From the IMG/VR virus record IMGVR_UViG_3300049793_000366, positions 186,001 to 250,000 of that record: a DNA stretch of 64,000 nucleotides. One strand, given 5' to 3'. Position 1 is the stretch's first letter. Each line of letters opens with the position of its first letter. The translations under genes and the position numbers were made by a program. Below, in pieces: positions 3,375 to 46,412 of this stretch. The notes under the pieces are model-generated. The model worked only from the letters and a program-made list of their open reading frames with translations. It did no database searches and was not told where the DNA came from.

Positions 3375-3406
3375 CAAATGTACAAAAAAATATGGACATA
3401 TCCAAA
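3375..3406 (-). promoter_or_regulatory. Bacteroidota sigmaA-type promoter (TTTG-N20-TACATTTG)
   Basis: Minus strand TTTG gatatGTCCatatttttttg TACATTTG matches the -33/-7 consensus with 20-nt spacing. Confidence 0.75.
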
Positions 3407-7906: not shown

Positions 7907-7924
7907 GATGCTGCTCTTGATTTT

Positions 7925-7933
7925 TAATATATA
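7925..7933 (+). promoter_or_regulatory. Putative late promoter TAATATATA
   Basis: Exact motif upstream of ATG 7958. Confidence 0.6.
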
Positions 7934-7957
7934 CTTAAAATTGAAAGTAAAGTTTAT

Positions 7958-8383
7958 ATGCCAATAAAAATGTTTCAGGAGTTTTCTAACGAATCGGTGA
8001 ATAATATAATAAGCTTCAAATTGCTTGATATTGAACCAATTGAAAAAAGATTATCGGATCTTAAAACTTCTAATATTGACTATACAATAACGCCTGCTAT
8101 CTATAACTATTATCAAGGAAAACTGATATCTGTTAAGAGGATTAATCCTAAATTTAGCATGGTTGATAATCTAAGAGCGATACGAAAGAATGCTGTTGGT
8201 GAGATTTCACCAGGATTCAGAATTGATATTAAGATACCAGATTCTACAAAGGATAATACGTGGTTGTTTGATAAATTAGCATCAATTGAACAAGATTTAT
8301 CACCAGTATTTAGGTTTGATTCTAAGCAAGACCATGAGGGATATCATGTGGATTTTATATATAAAACAAAAGAAAAACTTTGA
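7958..8383 (+). CDS. Hypothetical protein with capsid-targeting-like N-terminus
   Basis: Starts MPIKMFQEFSNES. Confidence 0.6.
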   Translation: MPIKMFQEFSNESVNNIISFKLLDIEPIEKRLSDLKTSNIDYTITPAIYNYYQGKLISVKRINPKFSMVDNLRAIRKNAVGEISPGFRIDIKIPDSTKDNTWLFDKLASIEQDLSPVFRFDSKQDHEGYHVDFIYKTKEKL

Positions 8384-8808
8384 TGTATCTAATTATAGCG
8401 AATATTATTTTTATACTATATGCTCTAATCGAAGGATTTAGAGAGGGATTTTATTGGTTTTTTAAGGCTAACTCGCGTAGACAATCAGAGTTTGAAATCC
8501 ACCCCGTATTTGCTGTTCAAAGAGGTTTGGTGTTGGTATTGATAGCTCTTAATGTATTTATGTTCACTGATATATTGAGTGCTTCATTGAACTTTTTAAG
8601 TAATGCCCTTCTATTTAGTTTCTTTCATAATGGTTGTTACTACTTAACAAGAAACAAATTAGATTCTAAGGTTTACCCACTTAAGTGGAAGGATGATTCG
8701 AAAACATCAACTGCATTAACTACTAAAATATTTACATATAGAAATAGAACTATATGTGCTGTGATTGGTCTTGTTATAACAGTACTTAGTATTCTTTTAA
8801 TAAAATAA
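8380..8808 (+). CDS. Hypothetical multi-pass membrane protein
   Basis: 3-4 hydrophobic segments. Confidence 0.65.
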   Translation: MMYLIIANIIFILYALIEGFREGFYWFFKANSRRQSEFEIHPVFAVQRGLVLVLIALNVFMFTDILSASLNFLSNALLFSFFHNGCYYLTRNKLDSKVYPLKWKDDSKTSTALTTKIFTYRNRTICAVIGLVITVLSILLIK

Positions 8809-8818
8809 ATAAAAAACT

Positions 8819-9013
8819 ATGTCACATTTAGAAAAAAGAGGAATTGATAAATCAAGTGGTTTATCTGACCAAGAATTAACAATGCTTAGAGAGAAATTCA
8901 TCAGTGAATATTCTCAGAAAAAAGGATGGGTTAGAGAAACACTAACTACTGAACAATTACTTGAGATTAAAGAACAGAAGGGTTATAAGACACCTGGAAT
9001 GATTCTTGGATAA
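8819..9013 (+). CDS. Hypothetical small protein
   Basis: 64 aa ORF with A-rich leader, filling the gap between genes. Confidence 0.55.
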   Translation: MSHLEKRGIDKSSGLSDQELTMLREKFISEYSQKKGWVRETLTTEQLLEIKEQKGYKTPGMILG

Positions 9014-11470: not shown

Positions 11471-11502
11471 CAAATATACGGACATTTTTTCTAATTTGCA
11501 AA
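11471..11502 (-). promoter_or_regulatory. Bacteroidota sigmaA-type promoter (TTTG-N20-TATATTTG)
   Basis: Minus strand TTTG caaattagaaaaaatGTCCg TATATTTG. Confidence 0.75.
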
Positions 11503-29150: not shown

Positions 29151-31040
29151 ATGAATGAATTAAAAGAGGGAGATGTTATTGTAGGACAAATTGACTTCAA
29201 TACCAACGGTAACGCTTATCTCAGCGTGGATGGACACGATGATGTGTACATCTATAAAAAGAACACTTTAAATGCTCTACACTTAGATACGGTTGAGGTT
29301 CAACTACTTATGAGAGAGGGTAAACTAGAAGGTGTTGTTAAAGAAGTAGTAGGTAGATTTAAAACTGAATGGGTTGGAACCGTTCAACGAAATAAGAATC
29401 TGGTATTTGTTTTACCAGATAGCAATAAAACCCCCGTAGACTTCTTCATTCCAGAAGATGCATCAATGGGTGCTAAAGATAAACAAAAGGTCGTGGTGAG
29501 ACTTATTAAGTGGAAAAAAGGCACTAAATCACCATTTGCTAAGATTATTAAAATTTTAGGTGAAGTAGGTGATAATAACACCGAAATGAATGCGATTATG
29601 TATGAGTATGGCTTGCCTGTTGAATTTCCGAAAGAAGTTGAATTAGAAGCTGAATTGATATCATTTGAAATTCCACCTACTGAGATTGCTAAACGTAGAG
29701 ACATGAGAAGTGTTACTACATTTACAATAGATCCGGTAGATGCGAGAGATTTTGATGATGCATTATCAGTTGAGGTTAAAGAAGACCATGTTGAAATTGG
29801 TGTTCACATCGCTGATGTAACTCACTATGTTAAACCAGGTACTAAATTAGAAGAAGAAGCAATTAAAAGAGCTACTTCTGTTTACTTGGTTGATAGATGT
29901 GTTCCGATGTTACCTGAGAGATTATCGAATGGTGTTTGTTCACTAAGACCACATGAAGAAAAATTGTGTTACTCTGTTATCTTTAAAATGGATTCAGAAG
30001 GTAATGTGTTAGATACATGGTATGGTCGTACTATAATCTATTCTGATAGAAGATTTAGTTATGAAGAAGCACAAGAAATAATTGAAGGCAAGGCTGGTGA
30101 TTTTTCTGATGAATTAACATTGTTCAATACTCTTGCTAAGAAAATCAGAGGACGTAGAATTAAAAGTGGTTCATTGGAAATGGATTCAGCAGAAGTGCGA
30201 TTTAGATTAGATGAACGCGGTAAACCACTTGATGTGTATTTTAAAATACAAAAGGATGCTAATAAATTAATTGAAGAGTTTATGTTGTTAGCTAATCAAG
30301 CAGTTGCTAAGATATTATCTGATAACTCATATAATTCAGTTTATAGAGTTCACGATAAACCAAGCCAAGAAAAATTAGAGGCACTTACTGGTGTTGCTAC
30401 TAACTTTGGTTATAAAGTTAATTTATATCAACCAGAGAAAATAAAAGAATCATTGAATAGTTTATTGGCCGAAATTAAAGGTAAACCAGAAGAGAATATG
30501 ATTTCTACTTTGGTTACAAGGTCAATGGCTAAAGCAACATATACAATTAAAAATATTGGGCATTATGGATTAGGCTTTACTCACTATTCACATTTCACAT
30601 CACCTATTAGACGATATCCTGATATGATGTCTCATAGATTACTTGATGATTATTTAACAAAGAAACCTAAGGGAAATCCTACTGTTGTTGAACAACAAGC
30701 TAAGTGGTCTTCTGAGAGAGAATTAATTGCGGCTAAAGCACAACGAGATTCTATTAAATATAAACAAGCTGAATATTTACAAGATAAAATTGGTAAAGTT
30801 TTCAAAGGTGTTGTATCTGGTGTTACTGATTGGGGAATGTATGTTGAGATAATTGAAAACAAATGTGAGGGTATGATTCGCTTTAAAGATATTGGTGATG
30901 ATATATTCATACCAGATGTAAACGCATATCAAGTTGTAGGTCATAAGACTGGTCAAATCATAAGATTGGGTGATGAGATAATGGTCAGTGTAGCTGGTGT
31001 TAATCTTGAAAAGAAGTCGATAGATTTAAAAGTATTCTAA
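29151..31040 (+). CDS. rnr: Ribonuclease R
   Basis: CSD domains; TIDPVDARDFDDALS (catalytic Asp); VHIADV; LIEEFMLLAN; HFTSPIRRYPD; C-terminal S1 domain. Confidence 0.95.
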   Translation: MNELKEGDVIVGQIDFNTNGNAYLSVDGHDDVYIYKKNTLNALHLDTVEVQLLMREGKLEGVVKEVVGRFKTEWVGTVQRNKNLVFVLPDSNKTPVDFFIPEDASMGAKDKQKVVVRLIKWKKGTKSPFAKIIKILGEVGDNNTEMNAIMYEYGLPVEFPKEVELEAELISFEIPPTEIAKRRDMRSVTTFTIDPVDARDFDDALSVEVKEDHVEIGVHIADVTHYVKPGTKLEEEAIKRATSVYLVDRCVPMLPERLSNGVCSLRPHEEKLCYSVIFKMDSEGNVLDTWYGRTIIYSDRRFSYEEAQEIIEGKAGDFSDELTLFNTLAKKIRGRRIKSGSLEMDSAEVRFRLDERGKPLDVYFKIQKDANKLIEEFMLLANQAVAKILSDNSYNSVYRVHDKPSQEKLEALTGVATNFGYKVNLYQPEKIKESLNSLLAEIKGKPEENMISTLVTRSMAKATYTIKNIGHYGLGFTHYSHFTSPIRRYPDMMSHRLLDDYLTKKPKGNPTVVEQQAKWSSERELIAAKAQRDSIKYKQAEYLQDKIGKVFKGVVSGVTDWGMYVEIIENKCEGMIRFKDIGDDIFIPDVNAYQVVGHKTGQIIRLGDEIMVSVAGVNLEKKSIDLKVF

Positions 31041-31076: not shown

Positions 31077-32042
31077 TTATTGTATAATAATTTTCTTGAC
31101 TTCTATTGTTCTATCTGTGTATTCTATATGTTGAATATACATACCTGGTTTTGTGTCAGTAGTTTCAACACCAGTTAAGTCATATGTAGTTATCAATTTA
31201 ACAACTTTTTGTGATTGATTGTCAATAGATATAATACCAGAATATTCGTATTGACCATTGAAGTCAGTTTGTTTAAGTCTATAATAATTTATAGCATCTT
31301 TAATGAACATATAATCTTTGAATGTATAACTCAATAAAGTAGTTGATGTACCAGCACCATCTATGTTTGCTACTTTCTCCCAGTTAATACCATCACTACT
31401 TCTTTCTATTGTATAGAAGTCATTATTCATTTCGGTTGCTGTTTTCCAAGATAGTAAATTATGCGAATTATAATTGAAGCCATCGAATGATAATAACTCA
31501 ATTGGTAGTGGGTTAGAACAATTTATAACGAAGTTATCAAAGTCATAGAAATATACTGCTGTTCCTGGAGGTCCCGGAGGTCCTGTGACATAGCTGTTTA
31601 TTGTAGCATTTGTTATTAAACAAAATCTAAATTGTATAATGTTATTAGGTAAACCAGAGTAAGTATGCGTAACGCTATTGTATAATCCGGTGTATGTATC
31701 TAATGTAGTCCAGGTCGAACCGTTTGTAGTGTATTGAAAGTATAAAAAATCAAATCCATTCTGTATGATACCATTGTGTAGAAAGGTTACGGAAAGACCA
31801 CTGATGCAGTTTGTCATATTTAAAACAGGACTAACCATAGTAACAGTTGCGCTATTTGGGTATGGTGTTGTGCCTATATTTGTTGTAAGCCAAGAGCTAC
31901 CACCATATACTTGAATTCCCGCACCATTTGTAACAGACCAGCCGCCTAATCCTGTAAAATTATATGTTGTTGGATAAGATATTTGGCTAAATCCAACTAA
32001 GCTAATTAAGGATATGAATAAAGTTATTATAAATCTTTTCAT
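31077..32042 (-). CDS. Secreted beta-sandwich protein with Bacteroidota Ig-like module and T9SS-type C-terminal domain
   Basis: Sec signal MKRFIITLFISLISLVGFSQ; PLPIELLSF...W.TATE.NND.Y.IERS.DG..W...GAGTS...Y.F.D...YYRLKQTDFNG; C-terminal YDLTG...PGMYI...KKIII. Confidence 0.8.
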   Translation of the reverse strand: MKRFIITLFISLISLVGFSQISYPTTYNFTGLGGWSVTNGAGIQVYGGSSWLTTNIGTTPYPNSATVTMVSPVLNMTNCISGLSVTFLHNGIIQNGFDFLYFQYTTNGSTWTTLDTYTGLYNSVTHTYSGLPNNIIQFRFCLITNATINSYVTGPPGPPGTAVYFYDFDNFVINCSNPLPIELLSFDGFNYNSHNLLSWKTATEMNNDFYTIERSSDGINWEKVANIDGAGTSTTLLSYTFKDYMFIKDAINYYRLKQTDFNGQYEYSGIISIDNQSQKVVKLITTYDLTGVETTDTKPGMYIQHIEYTDRTIEVKKIIIQ

Positions 32043-32333: not shown

Positions 32334-32341
32334 CAAATATA
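32334..32341 (-). promoter_or_regulatory. Bacteroidota -7 element TATATTTG (no clear -33)
   Basis: Upstream of ATG 32307; GGAC at 32361-32364 sits where the -33 element would be. Confidence 0.5.
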
Positions 32342-32372
32342 TGGATAAGTTTTTAATTCCGGACTTGGGTTT

Positions 32373-32403: not shown

Positions 32404-32994
32404 ATGAGAATTAAGAATTTTAGTGAATTTTCAATCAACGAGGATGCTGAACCGTTTAACGATTCGCCAGAAACATATATTGATATAGCTTTAACTAAGT
32501 TGAAGAAGAAGATTGATGGTATGTTTGAAGCTGAAGCTGAGGGTGAAGAGAGCGAAGGTGATGATGAAAAACCAGTGGTTACTGAAAAGACACCAGAGCA
32601 AGCAAGAGAAGATAAGAAGAAATCTGATGAAACTTCTTTTACTGAGTTGGGTCTTAAACTTGAGTCGTCTGAGATTAGTAAATACTCTAAATTATATGAT
32701 TCATTGACTGTAAAATTCTCTGATGAGAAGTATTTATATCACCTTTATGTTATGATGAAATTAGAAGATGCTATATCTAAAGAGCCTGGTACTGAGATTG
32801 AACAATCTGGTGTAGATGAGGCTTACATAGTATTCAAGAAATATGATATACAATCATTGGAAATTGTTGGTCAGCTTAGTAAAAATATCAAAACAAGCGA
32901 AATCACACAAGATTATATTGTTGACTTAAAACTTGAAGTTGATGAGGCGTTTGGTGATGCTGATGAAGAAGAATTTAAGATAGAGACCGAATAA
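32404..32994 (+). CDS. Acidic hypothetical protein with capsid-targeting-like N-terminus
   Basis: MRIKNFSEFSINED. Confidence 0.6.
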   Translation: MRIKNFSEFSINEDAEPFNDSPETYIDIALTKLKKKIDGMFEAEAEGEESEGDDEKPVVTEKTPEQAREDKKKSDETSFTELGLKLESSEISKYSKLYDSLTVKFSDEKYLYHLYVMMKLEDAISKEPGTEIEQSGVDEAYIVFKKYDIQSLEIVGQLSKNIKTSEITQDYIVDLKLEVDEAFGDADEEEFKIETE

Positions 32995-33407
32995 TGAAAC
33001 ACATCAAGCGTTTTGAAAATATCGACAGTAAAGATTACTCAAGAATAGAATCTAGGAATTACGTCACTTGTGAGGAATGTTCTGGTACAGGTGATGCTCC
33101 TGTTGATGGTTCTTGCGAGAATTGTTATGGTAAAGGTCGATATGCTGTTATGCTTGATGATAAAGAAGTAGTAGATTTTAAAAGAAATGAGAGGCTTTTT
33201 AATGAGCTTAAATTGGAATTAAATCCACCACGATATACTGAATTTTGTGTAATAGATGGTGTCTATACGCAAGAGTTCATGGTTAAGATTATTTCTGCTG
33301 AGAGTCTATCGATGTTACCAAAATACATTAGTATTGGTTTAGATATCTATGTTGTACCAGATATGGGTGGAGTTAAAATTAATGTTTCCCGTGATATGGA
33401 TAAGTAA
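32994..33407 (+). CDS. DnaJ-type zinc-finger protein with capsid-targeting-like N-terminus
   Basis: MKHIKRFEN; CEECSGTG...CENCYGKG. Confidence 0.65.
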   Translation: MKHIKRFENIDSKDYSRIESRNYVTCEECSGTGDAPVDGSCENCYGKGRYAVMLDDKEVVDFKRNERLFNELKLELNPPRYTEFCVIDGVYTQEFMVKIISAESLSMLPKYISIGLDIYVVPDMGGVKINVSRDMDK

Positions 33408-33425
33408 TTTATTACTATATAATCC

Positions 33426-33941
33426 ATGTTTAATTTCGTAGCAAGCCAAAGAACCATTTCAAAGATAAAGCAGGGTTCAAAATACTTTACACCATACTTA
33501 GGTATGGCTTTCACTACTGAGGATAAAGACGGTAGAAAATTCAGAATAAATGATAAAGAAAAATTTGCAAAAGATTACTTTGAAAAGAGTGGTCGAATGG
33601 CGTATTCACAGGGTAAAATTGGTAGCATAAATTTCTTTGTTGACCACTATATTACTGATAGTTTAGTTCTTTGTTATTATAATGATGAAGAAGTAGCTTT
33701 TGAATATTTAGACCACACAGCTAAAGAAAAGGGAGTAGATGCTTATCTTGGATCTATGATAAAGAAAGTAGAATCTATTTACGCAGAAGAAGTTACTTCA
33801 AAGAAAGAGAATATGACCGAGAGAGATATTAATCAAATGCCTGGTGATGCGAGTAAGTTATATACAAATCCTGGTCAAGTTACATATGACGATATTAAGA
33901 AGTATATGCAACAAAAGAAAAATGGTGGAACTAAACCTTAG
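33426..33941 (+). CDS. Hypothetical protein
   Basis: 171 aa ORF. Confidence 0.6.
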   Translation: MFNFVASQRTISKIKQGSKYFTPYLGMAFTTEDKDGRKFRINDKEKFAKDYFEKSGRMAYSQGKIGSINFFVDHYITDSLVLCYYNDEEVAFEYLDHTAKEKGVDAYLGSMIKKVESIYAEEVTSKKENMTERDINQMPGDASKLYTNPGQVTYDDIKKYMQQKKNGGTKP

Positions 33942-35014
33942 TCAAATATTTCGGCACCAGCATATTTGTTCTGAACAAACAAGAATGATACACCAGTTGA
34001 TTTAAAAAGGTCTTCACCTAAATCCATGATATCTTCATCATCATTGTCATAATACCATCTAACTTTTGGTAATGTACATTTTTTGAGAAGTTTTATTATA
34101 TCCAAAACATATTTTTCTGAACCACTACTGATGAAATCTAAAGAGATATCTAATGTTAGGTTCTGTGGGTTTGTATCGCAATACTCTTTGAACCACTCAT
34201 AGATTGGTTTCCAGAATTGGTCAGCGTGAGAAGGATATGTGCGACCCTTAATTAAGAAGGTCTTCGTGCCTACATCAAACTTAATCTCTGGTGTGTAACC
34301 AGTGCTTGGTATAAATAATGACTTAAGTTTTTTATCAGTTGTTCTGTCTTCAATTTCACACGTTATACGCATTGATGAATTAATCAAACCATAATCTCTT
34401 GTTTTGTTCCCTTTAGAATCAAATATCTTAAAGTTTACGTATTGATTGTCTGCTACTAATACATTACCGGAAACAGCTTCTTTCCATCTTTCTAAATCGA
34501 AAGTGTGTACTTTCAAAATATTTAATGATGCGATGATAGTGATGTTTCTTTTAGCACATAGCGAATTGAAGAATTCAATCTGTGCTTGTAATCTATCTTC
34601 GAATCCTTTGAATGTTGGACCCAGTATGGTGAATAAGTTTATGGTATCAATGAATAAAAATTCAACATTACCAAGCAATTCTACATCAAACCCAAGAGTC
34701 ATATCATCTAATCCCTTAGAGTTAAACACTATGTTGATTGGGTCTGGTATATCGTAGATGCCAGTTATAACACCAGCCTTTATATCGTTCAGTGGTTTAT
34801 TTTCCAATACCGCGTAAATACGCTTTCTCATATATTCATCACTCGAATCGAGTCCGTAGTAGATAATATTCTTTTCGTCTTTTACTGCTTTAGCGGCAAT
34901 GTTAGCAAGTACGGTTGTCTTACCCGATTGATAGTGGGAAGCAACTATATTAAATTTACCTTCAACTATATTGAAGTTATGCGTTTCTTCTGTAAGAATT
35001 AAGTCTCTACTCAT
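33938..35014 (-). CDS. Fusion of a DnaB/RecA-type P-loop ATPase domain and a SiaC/DUF1987 domain
   Basis: ASHYQSGKTT (Walker A), FLFID (Walker B); C-terminal TPEIKF...IKGRTYP...FWKPIYEW...LDFISSGSEK...WYYDNDDEDIMDLGED. Confidence 0.75.
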   Translation of the reverse strand: MSRDLILTEETHNFNIVEGKFNIVASHYQSGKTTVLANIAAKAVKDEKNIIYYGLDSSDEYMRKRIYAVLENKPLNDIKAGVITGIYDIPDPINIVFNSKGLDDMTLGFDVELLGNVEFLFIDTINLFTILGPTFKGFEDRLQAQIEFFNSLCAKRNITIIASLNILKVHTFDLERWKEAVSGNVLVADNQYVNFKIFDSKGNKTRDYGLINSSMRITCEIEDRTTDKKLKSLFIPSTGYTPEIKFDVGTKTFLIKGRTYPSHADQFWKPIYEWFKEYCDTNPQNLTLDISLDFISSGSEKYVLDIIKLLKKCTLPKVRWYYDNDDEDIMDLGEDLFKSTGVSFLFVQNKYAGAEIFD

Positions 35015-35463
35015 TAGATAAGATTAAAAAGGTCAAGGTGTAAATGAAAATGGTTCAAAACTAAAATCATCAATATTGCTGATTTTATTGTTAGATAAAT
35101 GTATGAGATATATTTGTTTAGGTCGTTACATTTCTTGTTTAGTATTTTACCGATTATGTTTTGTATTATCTGTACAAAAAATGCAAAAATAAATAGCATA
35201 GCAAATACTTTCCAACTACCTGATATTAAACCCAATATACACCAGATTAATTCTGATAGTGCTATAAATCCAGTGAACATACCAGCGTTGTAATCGTCAC
35301 TTGTTCTATAATCTGCTTTTTTGGGAGAGCGTTTGTTTATTTTCTTAAAGGCTTCTGCCCATTCTGCTACCTTCCAAGTCTTGTGGTGATTGAAAAGATT
35401 GATTAAATCCAATAGGAATATGAATAATCCGATAGCGTAAAATATGTGTCCAAGTGTCTGCAT
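35014..35463 (-). CDS. Hypothetical multi-pass membrane protein
   Basis: Four hydrophobic segments. Confidence 0.65.
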   Translation of the reverse strand: MQTLGHIFYAIGLFIFLLDLINLFNHHKTWKVAEWAEAFKKINKRSPKKADYRTSDDYNAGMFTGFIALSELIWCILGLISGSWKVFAMLFIFAFFVQIIQNIIGKILNKKCNDLNKYISYIYLTIKSAILMILVLNHFHLHLDLFNLI

Positions 35464-35512: not shown

Positions 35513-35544
35513 CAAATATATGGACTTTTTTACTAAACGCCAAA
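35513..35544 (-). promoter_or_regulatory. Bacteroidota sigmaA-type promoter (TTTG-N20-TATATTTG)
   Basis: Minus strand TTTG gcgtttagtaaaaaaGTCCa TATATTTG. Confidence 0.75.
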
Positions 35545-35608: not shown

Positions 35609-38320
35609 ATGGCAGTGACCCCATTATATAAAGCATTAAAGTCAAATGGTACATCATTCTATGCTTTTCCTGGTGCAGCAGAAGATATTTCAGCAGCATA
35701 TCAGAACGAAAATTATAGGATGTATTTCTCAAAATTTGTTCTTCTTAATTTCCCTAAACAGAATTTAAATCCAGGAACGATGTCAAACCCAGTACAATGG
35801 GATTTTGAGAATAGCTTTGTTAAGTCCAACTTATCGGTTGCTTCTGACTACGCTGACCAGTTAGTTGAATCTCTTAGAAACTACGTTGCTAACCATGAGG
35901 TTACAATCAGAGATTCGAAGTTAAATAATACTGAATTTTTCTATGATAATAATCAATTATCAACAACGACTGAGAAGATTTTTTGGAAATGGTGTACTAA
36001 ATTAAATGTACTTGACTTAGAAAGAGCAGTACCAGGTGATGAGTACTTTGATAATTTACAAGAATTTGAAGCTAATAATATTGCGGATGATACATACTTC
36101 CCTGAGATACTATGGCGCGAGAGAGAGGTTATTGATTTTAGACCAGTTTATTTTTATCAAACTGGATATGGTACTTATTCATTAGGTCAGTTTTTAGAGA
36201 TTGAGTTTCAAGGTTCTACTAACTTTAGAGATGGTGATAAAATAGTATTTAGTGATATTTCAAACTCATCTCTTATTGTAGATGGTGTTTATGATGGATT
36301 CCAAGTTGATATTTTAAAAGTACTTCCAGCAGGTGCTACCGCTGGTGATAAAATAATTGTTGATTTAGTTTATACATCATCAACTGAGATTGAAACGATT
36401 GGTACTGCTAAGATAGTTTATAGTAGATTAGTTCAGTATATCGGTGAAGTAAATGGTATAAATAACGTACAAGAAGCTAATCGCTCTTATACAGAGGTTT
36501 ATGCTCACATCCCGGATCACACTGGTAAAACACCGGATATTTTATTTAGAACAAAAGTTGATGTTAACTATAAGCCGAATATGATTTATCCGATATTACC
36601 ATCTCAATTTCAACCTGAGATTATCGGAGCAGAAAACTTCAACTCTCCTATTGTTAATACGCCACAGAATTATCCAGGTGACTTCTACGGTCAGTTTGAT
36701 ACAGATGATTTCACATATGAAACATCTTCTGGTGACTCTCTTAGAAGAAGCGGTGATTACTTTGGTGTACAGGGTGATTTAAATGCGCCTATTTATAGCC
36801 CATCTACTTTAGATGGTTTATGTGTTGACTTTGATAGAACACATTACGTTAAGATGAATGTTATTGACAGAGAACTTAATACGTTCGATGAATTCAATGC
36901 TCTTAGTGTAAATGGTCAACCACCAGAAGATTTCGAATTTAATGCTATTCTTTGGTACTACACTGTTGAAGATGCTGTTAAGGGTGGTATTACTACAAAT
37001 ATGTATGGTATTACATTCTTAAATCATCCTAAACAAAATGTTGCTTATGAAGATGATAAACCATTAGTTAGAATAAAGTTACCTTCTTACAAGAAGTTAG
37101 TTGCTAATGATGGACAAGATGGTACATCATACGCATTCAGTTTGAATTTGAACTTCAATATCATAAATGATAATCCACAAGATACGTATAATCCGACTGC
37201 TATAAATTCGTTATTTAGTATGAATTTATTCAACGAGGCTATGAAGAGATTGGCTGAGTCTAATGATTCATTCATGAAGCTTAATGCTAATTATACTGGT
37301 GTAGTTGAGGATATTGATGGTTTAAGAGGTTTGTTATATACACAAACTGATTTTGCTACAATCAATTCGAGAATGTCTTTCTTAGAATCTCTATTGAATG
37401 CTTATCAATCAATGCAGTTACAAAGCTCTGATACTATTGAGGTTCAAACGAATTTATCAACATCACCGCCTTTGGTTCAGTTGATGTCTAAGGATGCAAC
37501 TTACTATAAAATTGAAAAAGTTAATACAACTGATTTATATAATACATCAGGTATAATACCTTTAAATATCAATGTACCAACTAATAAGAATTTCTTAGTT
37601 AATATTATTAACAATGACCAAACACAATTCACACTTGCGTCAAACACAAGATTAACAGTTGTTTTGGATAGAGATTTAGATTATAGACAATCAGTTGATA
37701 TCGTTATTACTGCTGATGACTTCGCAACACAAAATAAAGAATTGGATATTTATATCAAGTTTTATGATGGTTCACCAAACGGCTTACCTGTTGAGACACC
37801 ATTGATTACTAAAGTTAATTTACCAGTTTTCTATAACCAGTCTACTCAAGATTTATCAATTTCTAAGAAGTGGGACCAGACTATAATTTACCCAGTATTG
37901 GATGATGTAGCAAGACCTATATTAATCAATTCTGATGTAACTATGGATATTCCAGTATCGGTTGCTAACCTATCTAATATGGTTAAAGCTGGTGATACAT
38001 TCTTGGTTAATAATTTAATTATTGATCCGATTTCACCGACTGATTATTCTGGACAATATGTGGTTAAGGCTGTGTCATCAACTATGTCAACATCTACAAT
38101 TAAATTAGATATTTCTGATAAAGTTGAATTGGTTCAGTATGGTATATCAACATCTCAAATTACTGGTTATCCAGTTGAGATACATGGTACATCATCAGCA
38201 TTAGCTTCTATGCCTTCTCTTACTTTCAATAAAGGAGTTAAGTATAGAGTTACGAGAGTTGACCAATTTGATGCGTCTTCTTTATCGGCTCGTTATTTAA
38301 TTGAGAAGATTCTAAACTAA
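35609..38320 (+). CDS. Large putative virion structural protein (baseplate/tail)
   Basis: 903 aa, beta-rich, late motif upstream; no enzymatic motifs recognised. Confidence 0.55.
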   Translation: MAVTPLYKALKSNGTSFYAFPGAAEDISAAYQNENYRMYFSKFVLLNFPKQNLNPGTMSNPVQWDFENSFVKSNLSVASDYADQLVESLRNYVANHEVTIRDSKLNNTEFFYDNNQLSTTTEKIFWKWCTKLNVLDLERAVPGDEYFDNLQEFEANNIADDTYFPEILWREREVIDFRPVYFYQTGYGTYSLGQFLEIEFQGSTNFRDGDKIVFSDISNSSLIVDGVYDGFQVDILKVLPAGATAGDKIIVDLVYTSSTEIETIGTAKIVYSRLVQYIGEVNGINNVQEANRSYTEVYAHIPDHTGKTPDILFRTKVDVNYKPNMIYPILPSQFQPEIIGAENFNSPIVNTPQNYPGDFYGQFDTDDFTYETSSGDSLRRSGDYFGVQGDLNAPIYSPSTLDGLCVDFDRTHYVKMNVIDRELNTFDEFNALSVNGQPPEDFEFNAILWYYTVEDAVKGGITTNMYGITFLNHPKQNVAYEDDKPLVRIKLPSYKKLVANDGQDGTSYAFSLNLNFNIINDNPQDTYNPTAINSLFSMNLFNEAMKRLAESNDSFMKLNANYTGVVEDIDGLRGLLYTQTDFATINSRMSFLESLLNAYQSMQLQSSDTIEVQTNLSTSPPLVQLMSKDATYYKIEKVNTTDLYNTSGIIPLNINVPTNKNFLVNIINNDQTQFTLASNTRLTVVLDRDLDYRQSVDIVITADDFATQNKELDIYIKFYDGSPNGLPVETPLITKVNLPVFYNQSTQDLSISKKWDQTIIYPVLDDVARPILINSDVTMDIPVSVANLSNMVKAGDTFLVNNLIIDPISPTDYSGQYVVKAVSSTMSTSTIKLDISDKVELVQYGISTSQITGYPVEIHGTSSALASMPSLTFNKGVKYRVTRVDQFDASSLSARYLIEKILN

Positions 38321-38368: not shown

Positions 38369-38764
38369 ATGTTATATATCATATTAGTTATAATTTTTGT
38401 CCGTTCGGCATATGTTCTTTATCAGAATTATCGATTTGATAAATTCACTAAGAACGTCAGCGAATTTTTAATTGGTCAGAATTTACATCTTATGCCAAAT
38501 TTATGGAATTCCAAATCTATGAGAATGGATGAGCTTCCATTGCCAAAATTATCAATAGATAATATAAATCTGTGTGATATCATAGTTAAACCAATAGTAT
38601 CGGAAAAAACCAATACAGTAGAAGCGTATATTTTTACTTGGTCTAAGAAACTTACCAACTTTGATATACTTATGGGCTATAACATGACTCATAAGAAGAT
38701 AGATAGTATAAAACTCGATAAGGGAGAAATTCGAGATAAAAACATTGATAGATTACTGCAATGA
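38369..38764 (+). CDS. Hypothetical membrane-anchored protein with C-terminal RD tag
   Basis: N-terminal TM; ends EIRDKNIDRLLQ. Confidence 0.6.
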   Translation: MLYIILVIIFVRSAYVLYQNYRFDKFTKNVSEFLIGQNLHLMPNLWNSKSMRMDELPLPKLSIDNINLCDIIVKPIVSEKTNTVEAYIFTWSKKLTNFDILMGYNMTHKKIDSIKLDKGEIRDKNIDRLLQ

Positions 38765-39225
38765 TAACATTAATAGCCGCTTGTTCAAAAAATAGAGTTA
38801 TAGGGAAAGATAACAAGCTCATATGGCACATCCCAGACGATTTAAAGAGGTTTAAGAAGCTTACAGGTGGTAATCCTATATTGATGGGTAGAAAGACTTT
38901 TGAGTCTATTGGAAGAGCTTTACCGAACAGAGTTAATATCATATTAACGAGAGACAAAACATTTACGGCACCTGGTTGTCTAATCTATAATAACTTAGAA
39001 GAAGTCATAGCATTATATCGCTCAAATCTTTGGGTTATAGGTGGTTCTGAAATATACAGTCAATTACTATCATATGCTGATTGCGTTGAATTAACCTTAT
39101 TGGATAAAGAGTTTGAGGGTGATTCTTATTTTCCTGAATTACCAAGTGTTTGGAAAATAGATTCTAAAGAAGACTATTCACACGAAGGTCTTGATTACTC
39201 ATACATCACGTATAGAAAGTCTTAA
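38761..39225 (+). CDS. folA: Dihydrofolate reductase
   Basis: IAA..KNRVIG..NKLIWHIPDDLKRFK, ILMGRKTFESIG.ALPNR.N, VIGGSEIY, GDSYFP. Confidence 0.97.
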   Translation: MITLIAACSKNRVIGKDNKLIWHIPDDLKRFKKLTGGNPILMGRKTFESIGRALPNRVNIILTRDKTFTAPGCLIYNNLEEVIALYRSNLWVIGGSEIYSQLLSYADCVELTLLDKEFEGDSYFPELPSVWKIDSKEDYSHEGLDYSYITYRKS

Positions 39226-43628: not shown

Positions 43629-44597
43629 TTAAACATCGAAGAAATCGTCCTCATCCGTTACAGATGTAGTAGATGCCTGCTTTGAAGTTGCGTTTTCGTT
43701 AAAATCAAAGTCTTCTGTTGAAGCGACATTTTCAGTTTTAGTAGTTGTGTTTGAAGAAGTAAAGTTAGCTGAACTTTTTCCTGTTAAGAATGCGATAATA
43801 TCATTGATTTTACCATGTTCTTCGTCAGATAATTTCTTAGCTGAAAATTCTTCTAAATCATGCTCTCTCTCAAGAAGTGCTTTCTTAATAACTTCATGAT
43901 ACTTAGGCTCGATTTTCGCATCAGCACCAACTGGTACAGCTTTGAACTGTCCGTCTTTGTAAATTTGTACTGGTGTTGTTTGGCTTGCGAACTGTGACAT
44001 TTTATAGTCAGGGTAAGTTTCACCACCTGTTTCGATTTCTTTTACGTAAAGAATGAAATCTTTACCAGCCGAAAGGTCGAATACGTTGCAAGGAGATCCA
44101 GTGATTTCACCTGATTTCTCAGCAGCGATTTTGTCTTTAATAGTTTTACCGTATTGGTAAATCATAATTTTTCCTACTGTTTCTGGTTGATTTTCATCTT
44201 CCAATACAAGAACGTATGAGTAATACTTCTTAGAGTAGTTAAGACATTTTGCTTTTTCTTGAAGCATCGCGTTCTTAGAGTTCGCCATTGAATAGTACAA
44301 CTCAGTAAGTGGACACTTCTCGTTAAAGTTTTTTGGACTATCAAACCATCCGCTAAGTTCTTTAGGGTTTTTGATATTCACATAATGTGTAATTTTTTCA
44401 AGAGCTAATTGCCCAAGAGTTCCCGATTTTGTAAGGTTAGGTAGAAATCTTACTTTCGCTCTATATCCTTTTTTCTTGTCCTTACACTTGGACATATCGA
44501 TTCTGTAAATGCCGTCTGCACTCACTTGTTTTTTTTCCTCTAAGAAGTTCATCTTGGAGTCCAAATTGCCGAATAAATCATCATTCATTTCTGCCAT
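43629..44597 (-). CDS. T4 gp32-like single-stranded DNA-binding protein
   Basis: VRFLPN...CP....Y...K..YYSYVLV.ED...P...GKI.IY.YGK.I.DKI...VFDL..G.DF....YD.S.F; acidic tail EDDFFDV. Confidence 0.9.
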   Translation of the reverse strand: MAEMNDDLFGNLDSKMNFLEEKKQVSADGIYRIDMSKCKDKKKGYRAKVRFLPNLTKSGTLGQLALEKITHYVNIKNPKELSGWFDSPKNFNEKCPLTELYYSMANSKNAMLQEKAKCLNYSKKYYSYVLVLEDENQPETVGKIMIYQYGKTIKDKIAAEKSGEITGSPCNVFDLSAGKDFILYVKEIETGGETYPDYKMSQFASQTTPVQIYKDGQFKAVPVGADAKIEPKYHEVIKKALLEREHDLEEFSAKKLSDEEHGKINDIIAFLTGKSSANFTSSNTTTKTENVASTEDFDFNENATSKQASTTSVTDEDDFFDV

Positions 44598-44682: not shown

Positions 44683-44985
44683 TTAAGATTTTTTTTGATT
44701 ATTTCGGACAATAGTATTATATTCCCTTACACGTTTGCATCTAACGGTAAATTCTTTTTCATAATACGCTTCTCCATAATCAATTATTATTTTCATAAAT
44801 ACAGCCATAGCGGTTCTTGAATATCCACCATCAACTGAAACATCATAAATATTTTGCATTTGACCACGAAGCCAAGAAGTCATTTCTCTGCTGTCTTTAA
44901 AAAAGATGGCATAGGGCATTAGGTTAGCTACTGCCGCTCCTGCTTCATCATCGTAATATCCAAAATTAAATACACATAATATCAT
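44683..44985 (-). CDS. Hypothetical protein
   Basis: 100 aa ORF coupled to the upstream gene. Confidence 0.55.
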   Translation of the reverse strand: MILCVFNFGYYDDEAGAAVANLMPYAIFFKDSREMTSWLRGQMQNIYDVSVDGGYSRTAMAVFMKIIIDYGEAYYEKEFTVRCKRVREYNTIVRNNQKKS

Positions 44986-45506
44986 TATATGCTTATAATA
45001 ATCTTCTCACCAGAAGTTTTAGAATAAGTTACATTTGATATACCTTTTATTATTAGAGGCTCTATTGCTTTGCAATATTTAGGACCCATTCCGGGTTTTA
45101 CGTAAGCGATTGTTACGTGTGGTTTGTATGTGTAATTGTTGGTGTGTGGTAGTGTTCTTAATCTTTCGTTGAACGAGTGTATGGTATCAGATGATACGCT
45201 TAATTTAACTACATCAAATTCTTTGTTTTGAAAGCATTCTATATGTGTACAATCTATTAGTATGTCTGAACCAATTATTGTTTTACACAACTCAATGGTT
45301 TCATTATCTAATACATCTTCGTGTATTCCGTAGAGTAAAGTAATGTGTGGTTCGGTTTCAACACCGTATCTCTCTTCTTCGCAATGATATAAATCATCCA
45401 CATCGATTGAGTTAATGAATTTTTCCCAGTATTCGTCTGCTAATTCGAGATAAGTGAGTACACACCCGTAGTTGTAGTCATTACCGCTATGTTTTTTGTG
45501 TTCCAT
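44985..45506 (-). CDS. 2H phosphoesterase (T4 57B/Acb1-like or 2'-5' RNA ligase-like)
   Basis: Two HxT motifs: EPHITLLYG and YKPHVTIAY. Confidence 0.85.
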   Translation of the reverse strand: MEHKKHSGNDYNYGCVLTYLELADEYWEKFINSIDVDDLYHCEEERYGVETEPHITLLYGIHEDVLDNETIELCKTIIGSDILIDCTHIECFQNKEFDVVKLSVSSDTIHSFNERLRTLPHTNNYTYKPHVTIAYVKPGMGPKYCKAIEPLIIKGISNVTYSKTSGEKIIISI

Positions 45507-45555
45507 GTTAGAAAGAAAATTATATTTATATAATTCCTTTTTGAAAAGTTTCTGA

Positions 45556-45999
45556 CTACTTTAATGATTCTTTGAATTGGTACCAATCATAGATAGTTTT
45601 CGTTTCGGTTTCAATATCTGAGTCTAGTAAATGTTTTTGTATTTTTATTCTACCAGCTTTTGTTACTCGTTTAGTAGCATTCGCTACATCTCTAAGTTGT
45701 CTAAGAGATTTCTTTGGTGGTAAAGCACCTTCAAATGTTCCTTCTGTTAATGTGAATTTACCTGGACCATCGACAGTTACAGTATAAACACCATCACCTA
45801 CTTTGAAGGTTTCTCCAACTAATTTGGAAGTAGGTGTTATTGTTTTAGCATTATCCTCAACTATGTAGAAAGCAAGTTCTGTATCTACGTCATTAGCATC
45901 TTCTATTATTCTCTTCATTGTAGCCAATGGTTGACCCATTCTACCCATTTTTTCAAATGATTTATCTTGAATATATCTAACTGCTATTATCTTCTTCAT
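45556..45999 (-). CDS. Hypothetical protein
   Basis: 147 aa ORF. Confidence 0.6.
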   Translation of the reverse strand: MKKIIAVRYIQDKSFEKMGRMGQPLATMKRIIEDANDVDTELAFYIVEDNAKTITPTSKLVGETFKVGDGVYTVTVDGPGKFTLTEGTFEGALPPKKSLRQLRDVANATKRVTKAGRIKIQKHLLDSDIETETKTIYDWYQFKESLK

Positions 46000-46412
46000 T
46001 AGTTAACTATTGGATTTAATGTATTTAAATTATTGATACCATTTTCACCAAGCTCTTTTTTAAGAGTTTGTTCTATATAGGATCCTAATTCTTCTCGTGA
46101 GCTAAACTTTTTATTATATCGGTTAAACTCACCAGTATCAAGTTGTTTAATAGAAACAGTCATCTCGATATCATCCTTTGCTAATAGATAGAATATAATA
46201 GTTGTGTAAGTGTCCTTACCCATAAACGTGTATATCTGTGCTTTGTCTTTAAACACAGGATCAATAAAGAATGGGAATTCAAACATTAACCAATTTGAAA
46301 ACGCTACTGGTTCTGTGTTTTCTAAATCAACATCTTTATAAGATGCGTATGATGTTAGCTTTCTTTTTAATTCTTCGGTATCGAATAATTCGTTGAATTT
46401 CTTTAATCTCAT
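45999..46412 (-). CDS. Hypothetical protein with capsid-targeting-like N-terminus (start revised to ATG 46412)
   Basis: MRLKKFNELFDTEE. Confidence 0.6.
   Translation of the reverse strand: MRLKKFNELFDTEELKRKLTSYASYKDVDLENTEPVAFSNWLMFEFPFFIDPVFKDKAQIYTFMGKDTYTTIIFYLLAKDDIEMTVSIKQLDTGEFNRYNKKFSSREELGSYIEQTLKKELGENGINNLNTLNPIVN

What the first reader, a model, noticed from the sequence alone, without database searches (positions are those of the whole stretch)
33938..35014. DnaB/RecA-type ATPase fused to a SiaC (DUF1987) signalling domain
Seen: the N-terminal ~240 aa have Walker A ASHYQSGKT and Walker B FLFID in a DnaB-like layout without a DnaB N-terminal domain. The C-terminal ~115 aa (about 33941-34315) match the SiaC pattern TPEI.F...I.GR.YP...F..PI.EW...WYY..DDED..D.GED. 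The usual Y(F/L)NTSS phospho-motif reads FISSGS, with Ser at the Thr position. Established: Pseudomonas SiaC is a phospho-switch (SiaB kinase, SiaA phosphatase) controlling the SiaD diguanylate cyclase and aggregation. I know no such fusion in phages. Inference: the phage may intercept host Sia-type aggregation or c-di-GMP signalling, or place an ATPase under host kinase control. The gene lies in an early host-promoter unit with a membrane protein.
Basis: partly seen in the sequence, partly recalled or inferred. Interest (0 to 1): 0.7.

Follow-up and report, generated by a model that had tools for sequence, protein, structure and literature searches.

The report
Phage helicase-like ATPase fused to SiaC switch
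A small group of giant (~0.7 Mb) soil phages carries a conserved gene that joins a DnaB/gp41-type ATP-binding core to a bacterial SiaC-type phospho-switch domain and is always paired with a small membrane protein; the architecture was found nowhere else, and its role (most likely a signal-gated ATPase, not a c-di-GMP regulator) is still untested.

Summary
Window 33938-35014(-) is one 358-aa ORF. Its C-terminus is a clear SiaC/DUF1987 domain (Pfam 96.7 bits against a cutoff of 24.5). Its N-terminus has an SF4/DnaB-type RecA fold (TM 0.77-0.81 to DnaB_C clusters) with Walker A and B motifs and no DnaB N-terminal domain. The fusion is real: nine 90%-identity clusters from independent assemblies keep it, and both halves are under purifying selection. 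In 7 of 7 contexts it follows a 146-150-aa four-helix membrane-protein gene, coupled here by TAATG, downstream of a Bacteroidota-like promoter motif. No such fusion was found among 1.84 billion representative proteins outside this family, in 50,697 phage genomes, or in AFDB clusters.

- Ser at the acceptor position is normal (84 Ser, 79 Thr of 171 domains).
- The c-di-GMP idea is not supported. The 508 kb held has no GGDEF, SiaB-type kinase or PP2C. The nearest SiaC relatives are Bacteroidota modules next to PP2C sensor phosphatases, in genomes with no GGDEF match.
- Cellular SiaB-kinase::SiaC fusions have the same domain order.

Best reading (0.4): a phospho-switch-gated ATPase that works with its membrane partner. 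Main rival (0.25): a divergent replicative helicase, since no other DnaB-like gene lies in the 508 kb held. About 204 kb of the source contig was not visible.

The parts
35513..35544 (-). Promoter-like element TTTG-N20-TATATTTG with a GTCC extension, 49 nt upstream of the membrane-protein ATG. It belongs to a genome-wide motif family.
   Evidence: The degenerate core GTCC[AG]TAT[AT]TTT has 12 exact genome hits against 0.9 in shuffles. The 12-mer GTCCGTATATTT has 37 sites at one mismatch or fewer, 32 of them with TTG at about -33. The resemblance to the Bacteroidota -33 TTTG / -7 TAnnTTTG consensus is from my own knowledge.
35014..35463 (-). Gene for a 149-aa membrane protein: four long hydrophobic helices plus an amphipathic helix at 26-43. 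Invariant motifs are SGSWK, DY..DYN and C-terminal NHFHxH. Its stop overlaps the next gene's ATG (TAATG).
   Evidence: 7 orthologues, 70% mean column identity; pLDDT 87. It lies directly upstream of the fusion gene in 7 of 7 contexts.
33938..35014 (-). The 358-aa fusion gene (SF4/DnaB-like ATPase core plus SiaC domain), stop codon included.
34319..34975 (-). N-terminal SF4/DnaB-type RecA-fold NTP-binding domain (residues 14-232).
   Evidence: Foldseek PDB top hits are DnaB 4esv, gp41, RadA and KaiC, E about 2e-8. Atlas structure TM is 0.77-0.81 to DnaB_C clusters. AFDB hits are SF4/Twinkle over residues 16-237. phrog_19 DnaB-like scores 2e-8. Pfam DnaB_C is sub-threshold.
34913..34939 (-). Walker A / P-loop (residues 26-34, SHYQSGKTT). 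G31, K32, T33 and T34 are invariant.
34847..34849 (-). D56 in the invariant 'LDS' motif. It aligns with the catalytic Glu of SF4 motif H1a (SLEM in DnaB, SMEM in gp41), so Glu is replaced by Asp.
   Evidence: HMMER and hhalign alignments to H. pylori DnaB 4a1f and T4 gp41. Invariance.
34646..34660 (-). Walker B (residues 119-123, FLFID). D123 and T124 are invariant.
   Evidence: A beta-strand is predicted at 119-123.
33983..34312 (-). SiaC/DUF1987 (PF09345) partner-switch domain, residues 235-344.
   Evidence: Pfam 96.7 bits against a cutoff of 24.5. PDB 6k4f and 6kko at E = 2e-10. AFDB SiaC-family hits have TM-by-hit 0.66-0.74 and rmsd 2.5-3.6 A.
34112..34141 (-). Phospho-switch motif L292-K301 (LDFISSGSEK). 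S297 (window 34124-34126) aligns with P. aeruginosa SiaC T68 and is invariant in the phage family.
   Evidence: The role of N67/T68/S69 is taken from PMC8457831.
33941..33970 (-). Conserved C-terminal acidic-aromatic tail (N349, Y351 and terminal D358 invariant; it ends (I/V)(F/Y)D). It is specific to the phage family.

Best explanation
The gene encodes a phage-specific, phospho-switch-gated ATPase that works together with a dedicated small membrane protein.

Shown:
- An SF4 (DnaB/gp41-type) RecA-fold nucleotide-binding core, with Walker A, Walker B and an acidic H1a residue conserved, is fused to a SiaC/DUF1987 domain.
- The SiaC domain keeps the acceptor Ser and the surrounding (N/S)-S-x-S-x-K switch motif.
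- Both halves and the upstream 4-TM gene are under purifying selection and always occur together.
- The pair is translationally coupled (TAATG) behind a Bacteroidota-like promoter motif.
- The phage DNA that could be seen encodes no SiaB-family kinase, PP2C phosphatase or diguanylate cyclase.

Inferred:
- As in the Pseudomonas SiaABC partner switch, the phospho-state of S297 decides whether the SiaC domain binds a partner.
- That state is most likely set by SiaB-family kinases and SiaA-like sensor PP2C phosphatases of a Bacteroidota host. Such enzymes accompany the closest cellular SiaC relatives.
- The partner that is bound or released is the protein's own ATPase core or ring, the conserved cytoplasmic amphipathic loop of the membrane protein, or both. 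ATP binding or turnover, oligomerisation or membrane location of the SF4-like core would then be coupled to the host's signalling state.
- The output is not c-di-GMP.
For: - Domain identities.
- The fusion is conserved in nine clusters at 45-73% identity.
- The exhaustive HMMER search finds the N-domain only fused to SiaC. Of 2993 hits, the listed ones outside the family (best 150 shown) match the SiaC domain alone.
- pN is 0.10-0.22 against pS 0.71-0.82 for both domains, and 0.07 against 0.63 for the membrane gene.
- The membrane gene is directly upstream in 7 of 7 contexts, with a TAATG overlap.
- The acceptor Ser is invariant and normal for the family.
- The switch function of N67/T68/S69, and the suggestion that DUF1987 proteins modulate adjacent proteins, come from PMC8457831.
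- G000 has no HATPase_c_2, SiaB-family kinase, SpoIIE, PP2C_2 or GGDEF.
- The nearest cellular SiaC relative is from Bacteroidales. Those genomes hold four SiaB-family kinase matches each, and related SiaC genes lie next to sensor SpoIIE-domain phosphatases.
- Cellular SiaB-kinase::SiaC fusions show that an N-terminal ATP-binding domain joined to a C-terminal SiaC domain is a recurrent design.
- The catalytic Glu is replaced by Asp, and the sequence is highly diverged from all DnaB_C members. This fits a core recruited for a regulatory rather than a processive motor role.
Against: - No experiment or transcript data exist.
- Phosphorylation, ATPase activity, oligomeric state and the binding partner are all inferred.
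- The complex prediction for the membrane protein and the fusion gave no support (score 0.00). This is not evidence either way.
- The host is not identified, and SiaC is patchy in Bacteroidota (5 of 101 sampled genomes), so a host kinase may not be available.
- About 204 kb of the 711,805-bp source contig was not visible and could encode a kinase or phosphatase.
- The gene is the only DnaB-like gene in the 508 kb, although T4-type primase, polymerase, clamp loader and UvsX are present. It also lies near gp32-like SSB and DHFR genes. These points favour a DNA-replication role.
Confidence: 0.4

Rival explanations
1. It is the phage's own, highly divergent SF4 replicative or recombination helicase (a gp41/DnaB analogue without the N-terminal collar). 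The SiaC-like domain and the acidic C-terminal tail would serve as replisome-interaction or regulatory modules, and the membrane protein would anchor replication.
For: - It is the only PF03796-like match in the 508 kb held.
- phmmer with T4 proteins finds gp61 primase, gp43, gp44, UvsX and gp46 but no gp41.
- The other large P-loop ORFs are AAA+, ClpB, terminase, PhoH or glutamate-synthase-like, not helicases of this type.
- The fold is closest to DnaB, gp41 and Twinkle.
- The neighbourhood holds gp32-like SSB, DHFR and an RNB ribonuclease.
- The conserved acidic-aromatic C-terminal tail recalls the tails of T7 gp4 and of SSB proteins (my own knowledge).
Against: - The Pfam DnaB_C match is below threshold and covers only residues 18-84. 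hhalign to gp41 aligns only 66 columns.
- The catalytic Glu is replaced by Asp.
- No N-terminal domain is present.
- Few conserved basic residues lie in the stretch where DNA-binding loops would be expected (read).
- Translational coupling to a membrane protein is unusual for a replicative helicase.
- No homologue was found in any of 50,697 phage genomes, huge phages included, which is odd for a core replisome gene.
- About 29% of the source contig was unseen and may hold the true helicase.
Confidence: 0.25
2. Non-orthologous kinase displacement. The RecA-fold P-loop domain occupies the position that the SiaB GHKL-type kinase has in cellular SiaB::SiaC fusions, and itself phosphorylates S297 in cis or across a ring, as KaiC- and ArlH-type RecA-fold proteins autophosphorylate. 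This would make a self-contained timer or switch.
For: - Cellular DUF6272(SiaB-family kinase)::SiaC fusions have the same N-to-C order.
- No separate kinase lies in the 508 kb.
- KaiC structures are among the top fold hits.
- Walker A and B are intact and the acceptor Ser is invariant.
Against: - No KaiC-family (PF06745) sequence match at E <= 1.
- The fold is closer to DnaB than to KaiC, and the long KaiC alignments have rmsd of about 15 A.
- No evidence places S297 near the nucleotide site. The model's inter-domain confidence is low (pTM 0.55).
- Kinase activity of SF4-type cores on a separate domain is unprecedented (my own knowledge).
Confidence: 0.12
3. Decoy or sponge. The SiaC domain mimics host SiaC to titrate the host SiaB kinase, SiaA phosphatase or a SiaD-type cyclase, and so rewires host aggregation or c-di-GMP signalling. 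The ATPase core would merely multimerise the decoy.
For: - The SiaC domain is most similar to Bacteroidota SiaC proteins.
- The switch motif is intact.
- No phage-encoded partners were seen.
Against: - No GGDEF in the Bacteroidota genomes with the nearest relatives.
- Cellular relatives are not next to cyclases.
- It fails the SiaC equivalog model.
- Strong purifying selection on the ATPase motifs and an obligatory membrane partner are not explained by a simple decoy.
- SiaC occurs in only 5 of 101 sampled Bacteroidota.
Confidence: 0.12
4. Artefact: two genes joined by mis-assembly or a frameshift, or a decaying pseudogene.
For: None found.
Against: - The same fusion occurs in nine clusters from JGI, NCBI, ENA and Logan assemblies.
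- A Logan contig spans the junction with no differences (it may be the same sample).
- Both domains are under purifying selection.
Confidence: 0.01

Closest known systems
Pseudomonas aeruginosa SiaC (DUF1987, PF09345; PDB 6K4F, 6KKO, 7E6G) of the SiaABCD partner switch
   Same: Same domain family and predicted fold. The switch motif at the start of helix alpha2 is conserved, with a phosphorylatable residue at the T68 position. The domain probably works as a phospho-dependent binding module (PMC8457831).
   Different: It is not an orthologue (NF038265 57.8 bits against a cutoff of 150). It is fused to an ATPase rather than being a stand-alone protein of about 125 aa. No siaA, siaB or siaD genes accompany it. 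It is phage-encoded. The nearest relatives are from Bacteroidota, not Pseudomonadota, and have no cyclase link.
Cellular SiaB-family kinase (DUF6272, NF038262)::SiaC fusion proteins (for example P0018, P0022, P0115, P0152)
   Same: Same overall design: an N-terminal ATP-binding domain of about 180-230 aa followed by a C-terminal SiaC domain in a protein of 300-360 aa. Some lie next to a sensor PP2C phosphatase.
   Different: The N-terminal domain there is a SiaB-type kinase. Here it is an unrelated RecA-fold P-loop (SF4) domain. The phage protein has no DUF6272 or NF038262 match.
SF4 replicative helicases (DnaB, T4 gp41, T7 gp4, Twinkle) and the many phage 'DnaB_C-only' proteins of 210-290 aa
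   Same: RecA-type core fold with the same strand and helix order, Walker A, Walker B and an acidic H1a residue. Stand-alone DnaB_C cores are common in phages.
   Different: Below the DnaB_C gathering score. Asp replaces the catalytic Glu. There is no N-terminal collar or primase-binding domain. It carries a C-terminal SiaC domain and is coupled to a membrane protein. Helicase activity is untested.
RsbR-type stressosome proteins and other STAS-domain fusions (variable N-terminal domain plus C-terminal phosphorylatable STAS)
   Same: Same design logic: a C-terminal STAS-like phospho-switch domain attached to a variable N-terminal input or effector domain. DUF1987 is described as structurally related to STAS in PMC8457831. 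The RsbR comparison is from my own knowledge.
   Different: A different domain family, and no RsbT/RsbS-type partners. This is an analogy only and was not tested here.

Membership tests
SiaC / DUF1987 domain family (PF09345) | Profile match above the curated gathering score | tested here: met
   96.7 bits against a cutoff of 24.5, profile positions 1-115 of 120. All homologues carry it.
SiaC / DUF1987 domain family (PF09345) | SiaC fold (STAS-like alpha/beta) | tested here: met
   AFDB SiaC-family models have TM-by-hit 0.66-0.74 and rmsd 2.5-3.6 A over residues 220-349. Sequence match to 6k4f and 6kko at E = 2e-10. The model's domain pLDDT is about 70-87.
SiaC / DUF1987 domain family (PF09345) | Phosphorylatable Ser/Thr at the T68-equivalent position within Y-[FIL]-N-[ST]-x-S-x-K | tested here: met
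   S297 aligns with T68 and is invariant in the phage family. The family uses Ser 84 times and Thr 79 times in 171 domains.
SiaC / DUF1987 domain family (PF09345) | Actual reversible phosphorylation that controls partner binding | not testable with these tools
   Needs phosphoproteomics or biochemistry.
SiaC orthologue of the SiaABCD c-di-GMP system (NF038265 equivalog) | Equivalog-level score | tested here: not met
   57.8 bits against a cutoff of 150.
SiaC orthologue of the SiaABCD c-di-GMP system (NF038265 equivalog) | Genomic association with the SiaA PP2C phosphatase, SiaB kinase and SiaD GGDEF cyclase | tested here: not met
   No PF07228, PF13672, PF13581, NF038262 or PF00990 match in the 508 kb held. 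Caveat: about 204 kb of the source contig was unseen.
DnaB/SF4 replicative helicase (PF03796 DnaB_C) | Profile match above the gathering score | tested here: not met
   19.7 bits against a cutoff of 27, residues 18-84 only. DnaB equivalogs in NCBIfam score 12-22 bits against cutoffs of 385-596.
DnaB/SF4 replicative helicase (PF03796 DnaB_C) | RecA-type SF4 core fold with Walker A and Walker B | tested here: met
   for the fold. GKTT 31-34 and D123 are invariant.
DnaB/SF4 replicative helicase (PF03796 DnaB_C) | Catalytic Glu in motif H1a (SLEM / SMEM) | tested here: not met
   The aligned residue is an invariant Asp56 (LDS). This is a conservative change, so activity is not excluded.
DnaB/SF4 replicative helicase (PF03796 DnaB_C) | N-terminal helical collar or primase-interaction domain | tested here: not met
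   The P-loop starts at residue 26. Residues 1-13 are predicted disordered and are absent from several orthologues.
DnaB/SF4 replicative helicase (PF03796 DnaB_C) | Hexameric ring, DNA-stimulated NTPase and unwinding | not testable with these tools
   A hexamer exceeds the size limit of the complex tool. Biochemistry is needed.
KaiC-type autokinase (PF06745) | Profile match, or a close fold match that includes phospho-site loops | tested here: not met
   No PF06745 hit at E <= 1. The KaiC fold hits are long alignments with rmsd 14-16 A.
SiaB-family kinase::SiaC fusion | N-terminal DUF6272 / NF038262 domain | tested here: not met
   No such match in P0001. It is present in the cellular fusions P0018, P0022, P0115 and P0152. 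Only the domain order is shared.

The most novel reading that the evidence does not exclude
The SF4/RecA-fold P-loop domain has displaced the GHKL-type SiaB kinase and is either the phosphodonor for, or the direct regulatory target of, the fused SiaC switch. That would give either a new class of P-loop protein kinase with its substrate fused to it, or a replicative-type helicase whose activity in a roughly 0.7-Mb phage is gated by a bacterial partner-switch signal relayed through a dedicated membrane protein.
Probability: 0.15. Interest if true: 0.8.

Novelty: new variant of a known kind. Interest (0 to 1): 0.55.

Why it matters
SiaC/DUF1987 partner-switch domains are widespread, but they have been studied in only one system, Pseudomonas SiaABCD. 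Only one paper in the held library mentions DUF1987 at all. This finding matters for three reasons:
- It shows the domain recruited by a virus, in an architecture seen nowhere else among 1.84 billion representative proteins.
- It comes from a lineage whose cellular relatives apparently use the switch without c-di-GMP.
- It offers a compact two-gene system for asking what DUF1987 domains regulate outside Pseudomonas, whether giant phages read or rewrite host Ser/Thr partner-switch signalling, and whether an SF4 helicase-type core can be put under that kind of control.

If the rival reading is correct, it would be the first replicative-type helicase with a built-in partner-switch domain.

Tried and rejected
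- Complex prediction of the fusion with the 149-aa membrane protein: score 0.00, no verdict. It is not used as evidence either way.
- tblastn of the protein against 50,697 phage records: no match.
- IMG/VR pattern scan with the family alignment: no relatives.
- Megablast of 20 kb around the gene: only a 259-bp, 72.7% match to the 642-kb uncultured phage LR756502.
- PADLOC defence models: no hit for the fusion or the membrane protein.
- Pfam, PHROG and NCBIfam gave nothing useful for the membrane protein, the divergent 903-aa ORF or the convergent 171-aa ORF.
- Fold searches of the membrane-protein model in AFDB clusters and PDB, plus the Atlas search: no informative analogue.
- AFDB search for a protein sharing both domains: only spurious long alignments with rmsd 13-19 A.
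- Sigma-70 promoter scan: not enriched, 17 against 16 expected, and no intrinsic terminator. The generic TTTG-N17-22-TANNTTTG pattern is also not enriched in the window, 5 against 3.6. Only the extended GTCCGTATATTT motif is significant.
- My impression that ORF 31077-32042 carries a T9SS sorting domain, which would have been host evidence, was not confirmed by Pfam or NCBIfam and is dropped.
- hhalign of the N-domain profile against T4 gp41 aligned only residues 18-83. Motifs H3 and H4 and the arginine finger could therefore not be mapped residue by residue. K/R196 and R/K216 are only candidates.
- The related 709-kb contig could not be searched as a whole.
- The search for related loci with SiaC alignments failed for lack of a conserved stretch.
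- P0141 and P0074, which have unassigned N-termini ahead of SiaC, have no Walker A motif, so they are not further P-loop::SiaC fusions.
- The 467-aa P-loop ORF at G000 44799-46199 was tested as an alternative helicase and rejected: phrog_1250, AAA+-like.
Full report
**Observation.**
Window 33938-35014 on the minus strand is a single 358-aa ORF. Pfam assigns residues 235-344 to SiaC (PF09345) at 96.7 bits against a gathering score of 24.5. The same region aligns to solved P. aeruginosa SiaC (6K4F, 6KKO) at E = 2e-10, with S297 opposite T68.

By sequence, the N-terminal half is only a sub-threshold DnaB_C match: 19.7 bits against a cutoff of 27, residues 18-84, and phrog_19 'DnaB-like replicative helicase' at 2e-8. 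The predicted fold is clearer:
- Foldseek against the PDB returns DnaB (4ESV), T4 gp41, RadA and KaiC at E about 1e-8 to 1e-7.
- The ESM Atlas gives TM 0.77-0.81 over residues 1-231 to DnaB_C / SF4 clusters, many of them stand-alone phage proteins of 210-290 aa.
- AFDB clusters give SF4/Twinkle hits for residues 16-237 and SiaC-family hits for residues 220-349.

The P-loop starts at residue 26, so a DnaB N-terminal domain is indeed absent.

**Is the fusion real?**
The word-indexed search found five full-length homologues at 45-68% identity. A profile of the N-terminal domain alone retrieved nine 90%-identity clusters, all carrying the SiaC domain, plus one 143-aa fragment. These come from JGI, NCBI, ENA and Logan assemblies of different samples.

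The exhaustive HMMER search of 1.84 billion representatives found only two full-length representative clusters. All the other listed hits (the best 150 of 2993) match the SiaC domain alone. A Logan contig from a soil-metagenome run spans the whole stretch with no differences, although it may be the source sample.

Nonsynonymous differences are far below synonymous ones in both halves. pN is 0.10-0.22 while pS is 0.71-0.82, which is saturated. An assembly artefact or pseudogene is excluded.

**Genomic setting.**
The window is bases 186,001-250,000 of a 507,910-bp IMG/VR record labelled 'provirus'. The same gene sits at 423,832-424,908 of a 711,805-bp JGI contig, so the record is that contig minus its first 203.9 kb or so. 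A related phage contig is 709,085 bp. Two independent lengths of about 710 kb suggest that the whole contig is the phage and that the trimming is an artefact. Either way, about 29% of the contig could not be examined.

The held 508 kb encodes T4-type primase, polymerase, clamp loader, UvsX and gp46, a T4-type terminase, ClpB and PhoH. Near the gene it encodes an RNB-family ribonuclease, DHFR and a gp32-like SSB.

**The two-gene unit.**
In all seven contexts that could be read, a 146-150-aa gene lies directly upstream on the same strand, overlapping or abutting the fusion gene. In the window the junction is TAATG.

That upstream protein is well conserved, with 70% mean column identity and invariant SGSWK, DY..DYN and NHFHxH motifs. 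Its model is confident (pLDDT 87): four long hydrophobic helices plus a Lys-rich amphipathic helix at residues 26-43. It has no informative sequence or fold relative.

Forty-nine bases upstream of its ATG lies TTTG-N20-TATATTTG with a GTCC extension. The degenerate core GTCC[AG]TAT[AT]TTT occurs 12 times in the genome against 0.9 in shuffles. The 12-mer GTCCGTATATTT has 37 sites at one mismatch or fewer, 32 of them with TTG at about -33, and most lie just upstream of ORFs. The motif resembles the Bacteroidota -33 TTTG / -7 TAnnTTTG promoter consensus, which I cite from my own knowledge. 'Host-type promoter' is therefore reasonable. 'Early' is untested.

**The SiaC half.**
According to PMC8457831, N67/T68/S69 at the start of helix alpha2 form the interface with SiaD. 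Phosphorylation of T68 by SiaB blocks binding, and SiaA reverses it. The authors propose that DUF1987 proteins generally modulate adjacent proteins.

The phage family reads (N/S)-S-(G/S)-S-E-K, with S297, S299, E300 and K301 invariant.

The protein fails the equivalog model for Pseudomonas SiaC, scoring 57.8 bits against a cutoff of 150. It is a family member, not an orthologue.

**Partners.**
The 508 kb held contains no HATPase_c_2, SiaB-family kinase (NF038262), SpoIIE or PP2C_2 phosphatase, or GGDEF domain. NF038262 has a positive control.

The closest cellular relative of the SiaC domain, P0009, is a tandem-SiaC protein from an uncultured Bacteroidales MAG. That genome and a second Bacteroidota MAG each show four SiaB-family kinase matches, some adjacent to SiaC genes. 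Neither shows a GGDEF match, although both are incomplete MAGs.

Other close relatives lie beside TPR-PAS-SpoIIE or dCache-HAMP-GAF-SpoIIE sensor phosphatases, in contexts with Por_Secre_tail or CHU_C proteins. SiaC is patchy in the phylum, found in 5 of 101 sampled genomes.

The relevant cellular system is therefore a SiaA/SiaB/SiaC-type partner switch of Bacteroidota whose output is not evidently c-di-GMP.

**An architectural parallel.**
Several cellular proteins of 300-325 aa carry DUF6272 followed by SiaC. NCBIfam identifies DUF6272 as the SiaB-family protein kinase, at 123-142 bits against a cutoff of 85. A kinase-plus-substrate fusion with the same N-to-C order therefore exists in bacteria. 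The phage protein has an unrelated ATP-binding domain in the kinase's place.

**The ATPase half.**
Invariant residues include GKTT (31-34), D56-S57, D123-T124, and A162, L164 and N165. HMMER and hhalign alignments to H. pylori DnaB and T4 gp41 place D56 opposite the catalytic Glu of motif H1a. This is a conservative but family-wide Glu-to-Asp change.

Beyond residue 84, no sequence alignment to SF4 helicases was obtainable, so motifs H3 and H4 and the arginine finger could not be mapped. There is no KaiC-family match. A conserved acidic-aromatic C-terminal tail ending (I/V)(F/Y)D is specific to the phage family.

**Interpretation.**
I favour, at confidence 0.4, a phospho-switch-gated ATPase working with its membrane partner. 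The SiaC domain would toggle binding to the ATPase core, to the cytoplasmic loop of the membrane protein, or to both, according to the phospho-state of S297. That state is most plausibly set by host SiaB- and SiaA-type enzymes.

The main rival, at 0.25, is a divergent replicative or recombination SF4 helicase. This is the only DnaB-like gene in the 508 kb, although a gp61-type primase is present, and the other large P-loop ORFs are not helicases of this type. Counting against that rival are the sub-threshold and partial sequence match, the Glu-to-Asp change, the missing collar, the membrane-protein coupling, the absence of homologues in other phages, and the unseen 204 kb.

Lesser rivals are kinase displacement, in which the P-loop domain phosphorylates S297 (0.12), and a host-signalling decoy (0.12). 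The single complex-prediction job, on the fusion and the membrane protein, returned no verdict.

**Novelty.**
Both domains belong to known families, so nothing here is categorically new. The combination, its occurrence in a virus, and its fixed pairing with a novel membrane protein were not found elsewhere in the collections searched. The held literature mentions DUF1987 in only one paper. I rate it a new variant of a known kind, with moderate interest.

Noticed in passing
G000 whole record; window copies at 35513-35544(-), 11471-11502(-), 3385-3397(-), 32334-32346(-): A genome-wide bipartite promoter-like motif, roughly ATTTG(G/C)nnAT...(A/G)TCCGTATATTTG. The degenerate core GTCC[AG]TAT[AT]TTT has 12 exact hits against 0.9 in shuffles. 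The 12-mer GTCCGTATATTT has 37 sites at one mismatch or fewer, 32 of them with TTG at about -33. A dense cluster with a longer conserved version (TTTGGTAATCCGGAATATTATCCGTATATTT) lies at G000 470-507 kb. It resembles the Bacteroidota sigma-A consensus.
   Followed up: partly
G000 versus JGI contig Ga0497410_0000003: The IMG/VR 'provirus' record (507,910 bp) is the 711,805-bp contig minus its first 203.9 kb or so. A related phage contig is 709,085 bp. The true genome is probably about 710 kb, near the upper end of known phage sizes, and the 'host' trimming is probably an artefact.
   Followed up: partly
G000 (whole 508 kb): T4-type gp61 primase (279029-280285), gp43 (102167-103696), gp44 (85763-86707), UvsX (344929-346173) and gp46 (267344-269041) are present. 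No gp41/DnaB-type helicase other than the SiaC fusion was found.
   Followed up: partly
window 29151-31040 (+): A full-length RNase R/II-family exoribonuclease (OB_RNB, CSD2, RNB at 372 bits, S1) is encoded by the phage and is syntenic in the related 709-kb contig.
   Followed up: no
window 35609-38320 (+): A 903-aa ORF, divergently transcribed from the two-gene unit, is conserved in position in six of the related contexts (893-919 aa, or cut at a contig end; a 319-aa gene is inserted in L008). It has no Pfam, PHROG or NCBIfam match.
   Followed up: no
window 35014-35463 (-), residues 137-142: An invariant NHFHxH motif sits at the end of the last transmembrane helix of the 149-aa partner protein. 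It may be a metal- or proton-binding site on the outer face.
   Followed up: no
window 33941-33970 (-): All nine family members end in a conserved acidic-aromatic tail...Y-x-D-(S/A)-(D/E)-(I/V)-(F/Y)-D. It recalls the C-terminal docking tails of T7 gp4 and of SSB proteins (my own knowledge).
   Followed up: no
P0008-P0012, P0010; G001:C14:32514-33596; L014/L016: Bacteroidota and other cellular genomes hold tandem SiaC-SiaC proteins (245-278 aa), a 654-aa protein with three SiaC repeats, and a 376-aa ORF with two SiaB-kinase domains. This suggests a rich and unstudied diversification of the Sia partner switch outside Pseudomonas.
   Followed up: partly
window 38761-39225 (+) and 43629-44597 (-): DHFR (177 bits) and a gp32-like ssDNA-binding protein (61.7 bits) lie 4-9 kb from the fusion gene. 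DHFR is syntenic in relatives.
   Followed up: no
G000 7431-8918 (-), 442210-444345 (+), 364602-365372 (-): The phage encodes a glutamate-synthase-domain protein (270 bits), a ClpB-like double AAA+ chaperone and a PhoH-like protein.
   Followed up: no
window 32994-33407 (+): A 137-aa ORF carries a CxxC...CxxC DnaJ-type zinc-finger-like motif, with only weak matches.
   Followed up: no
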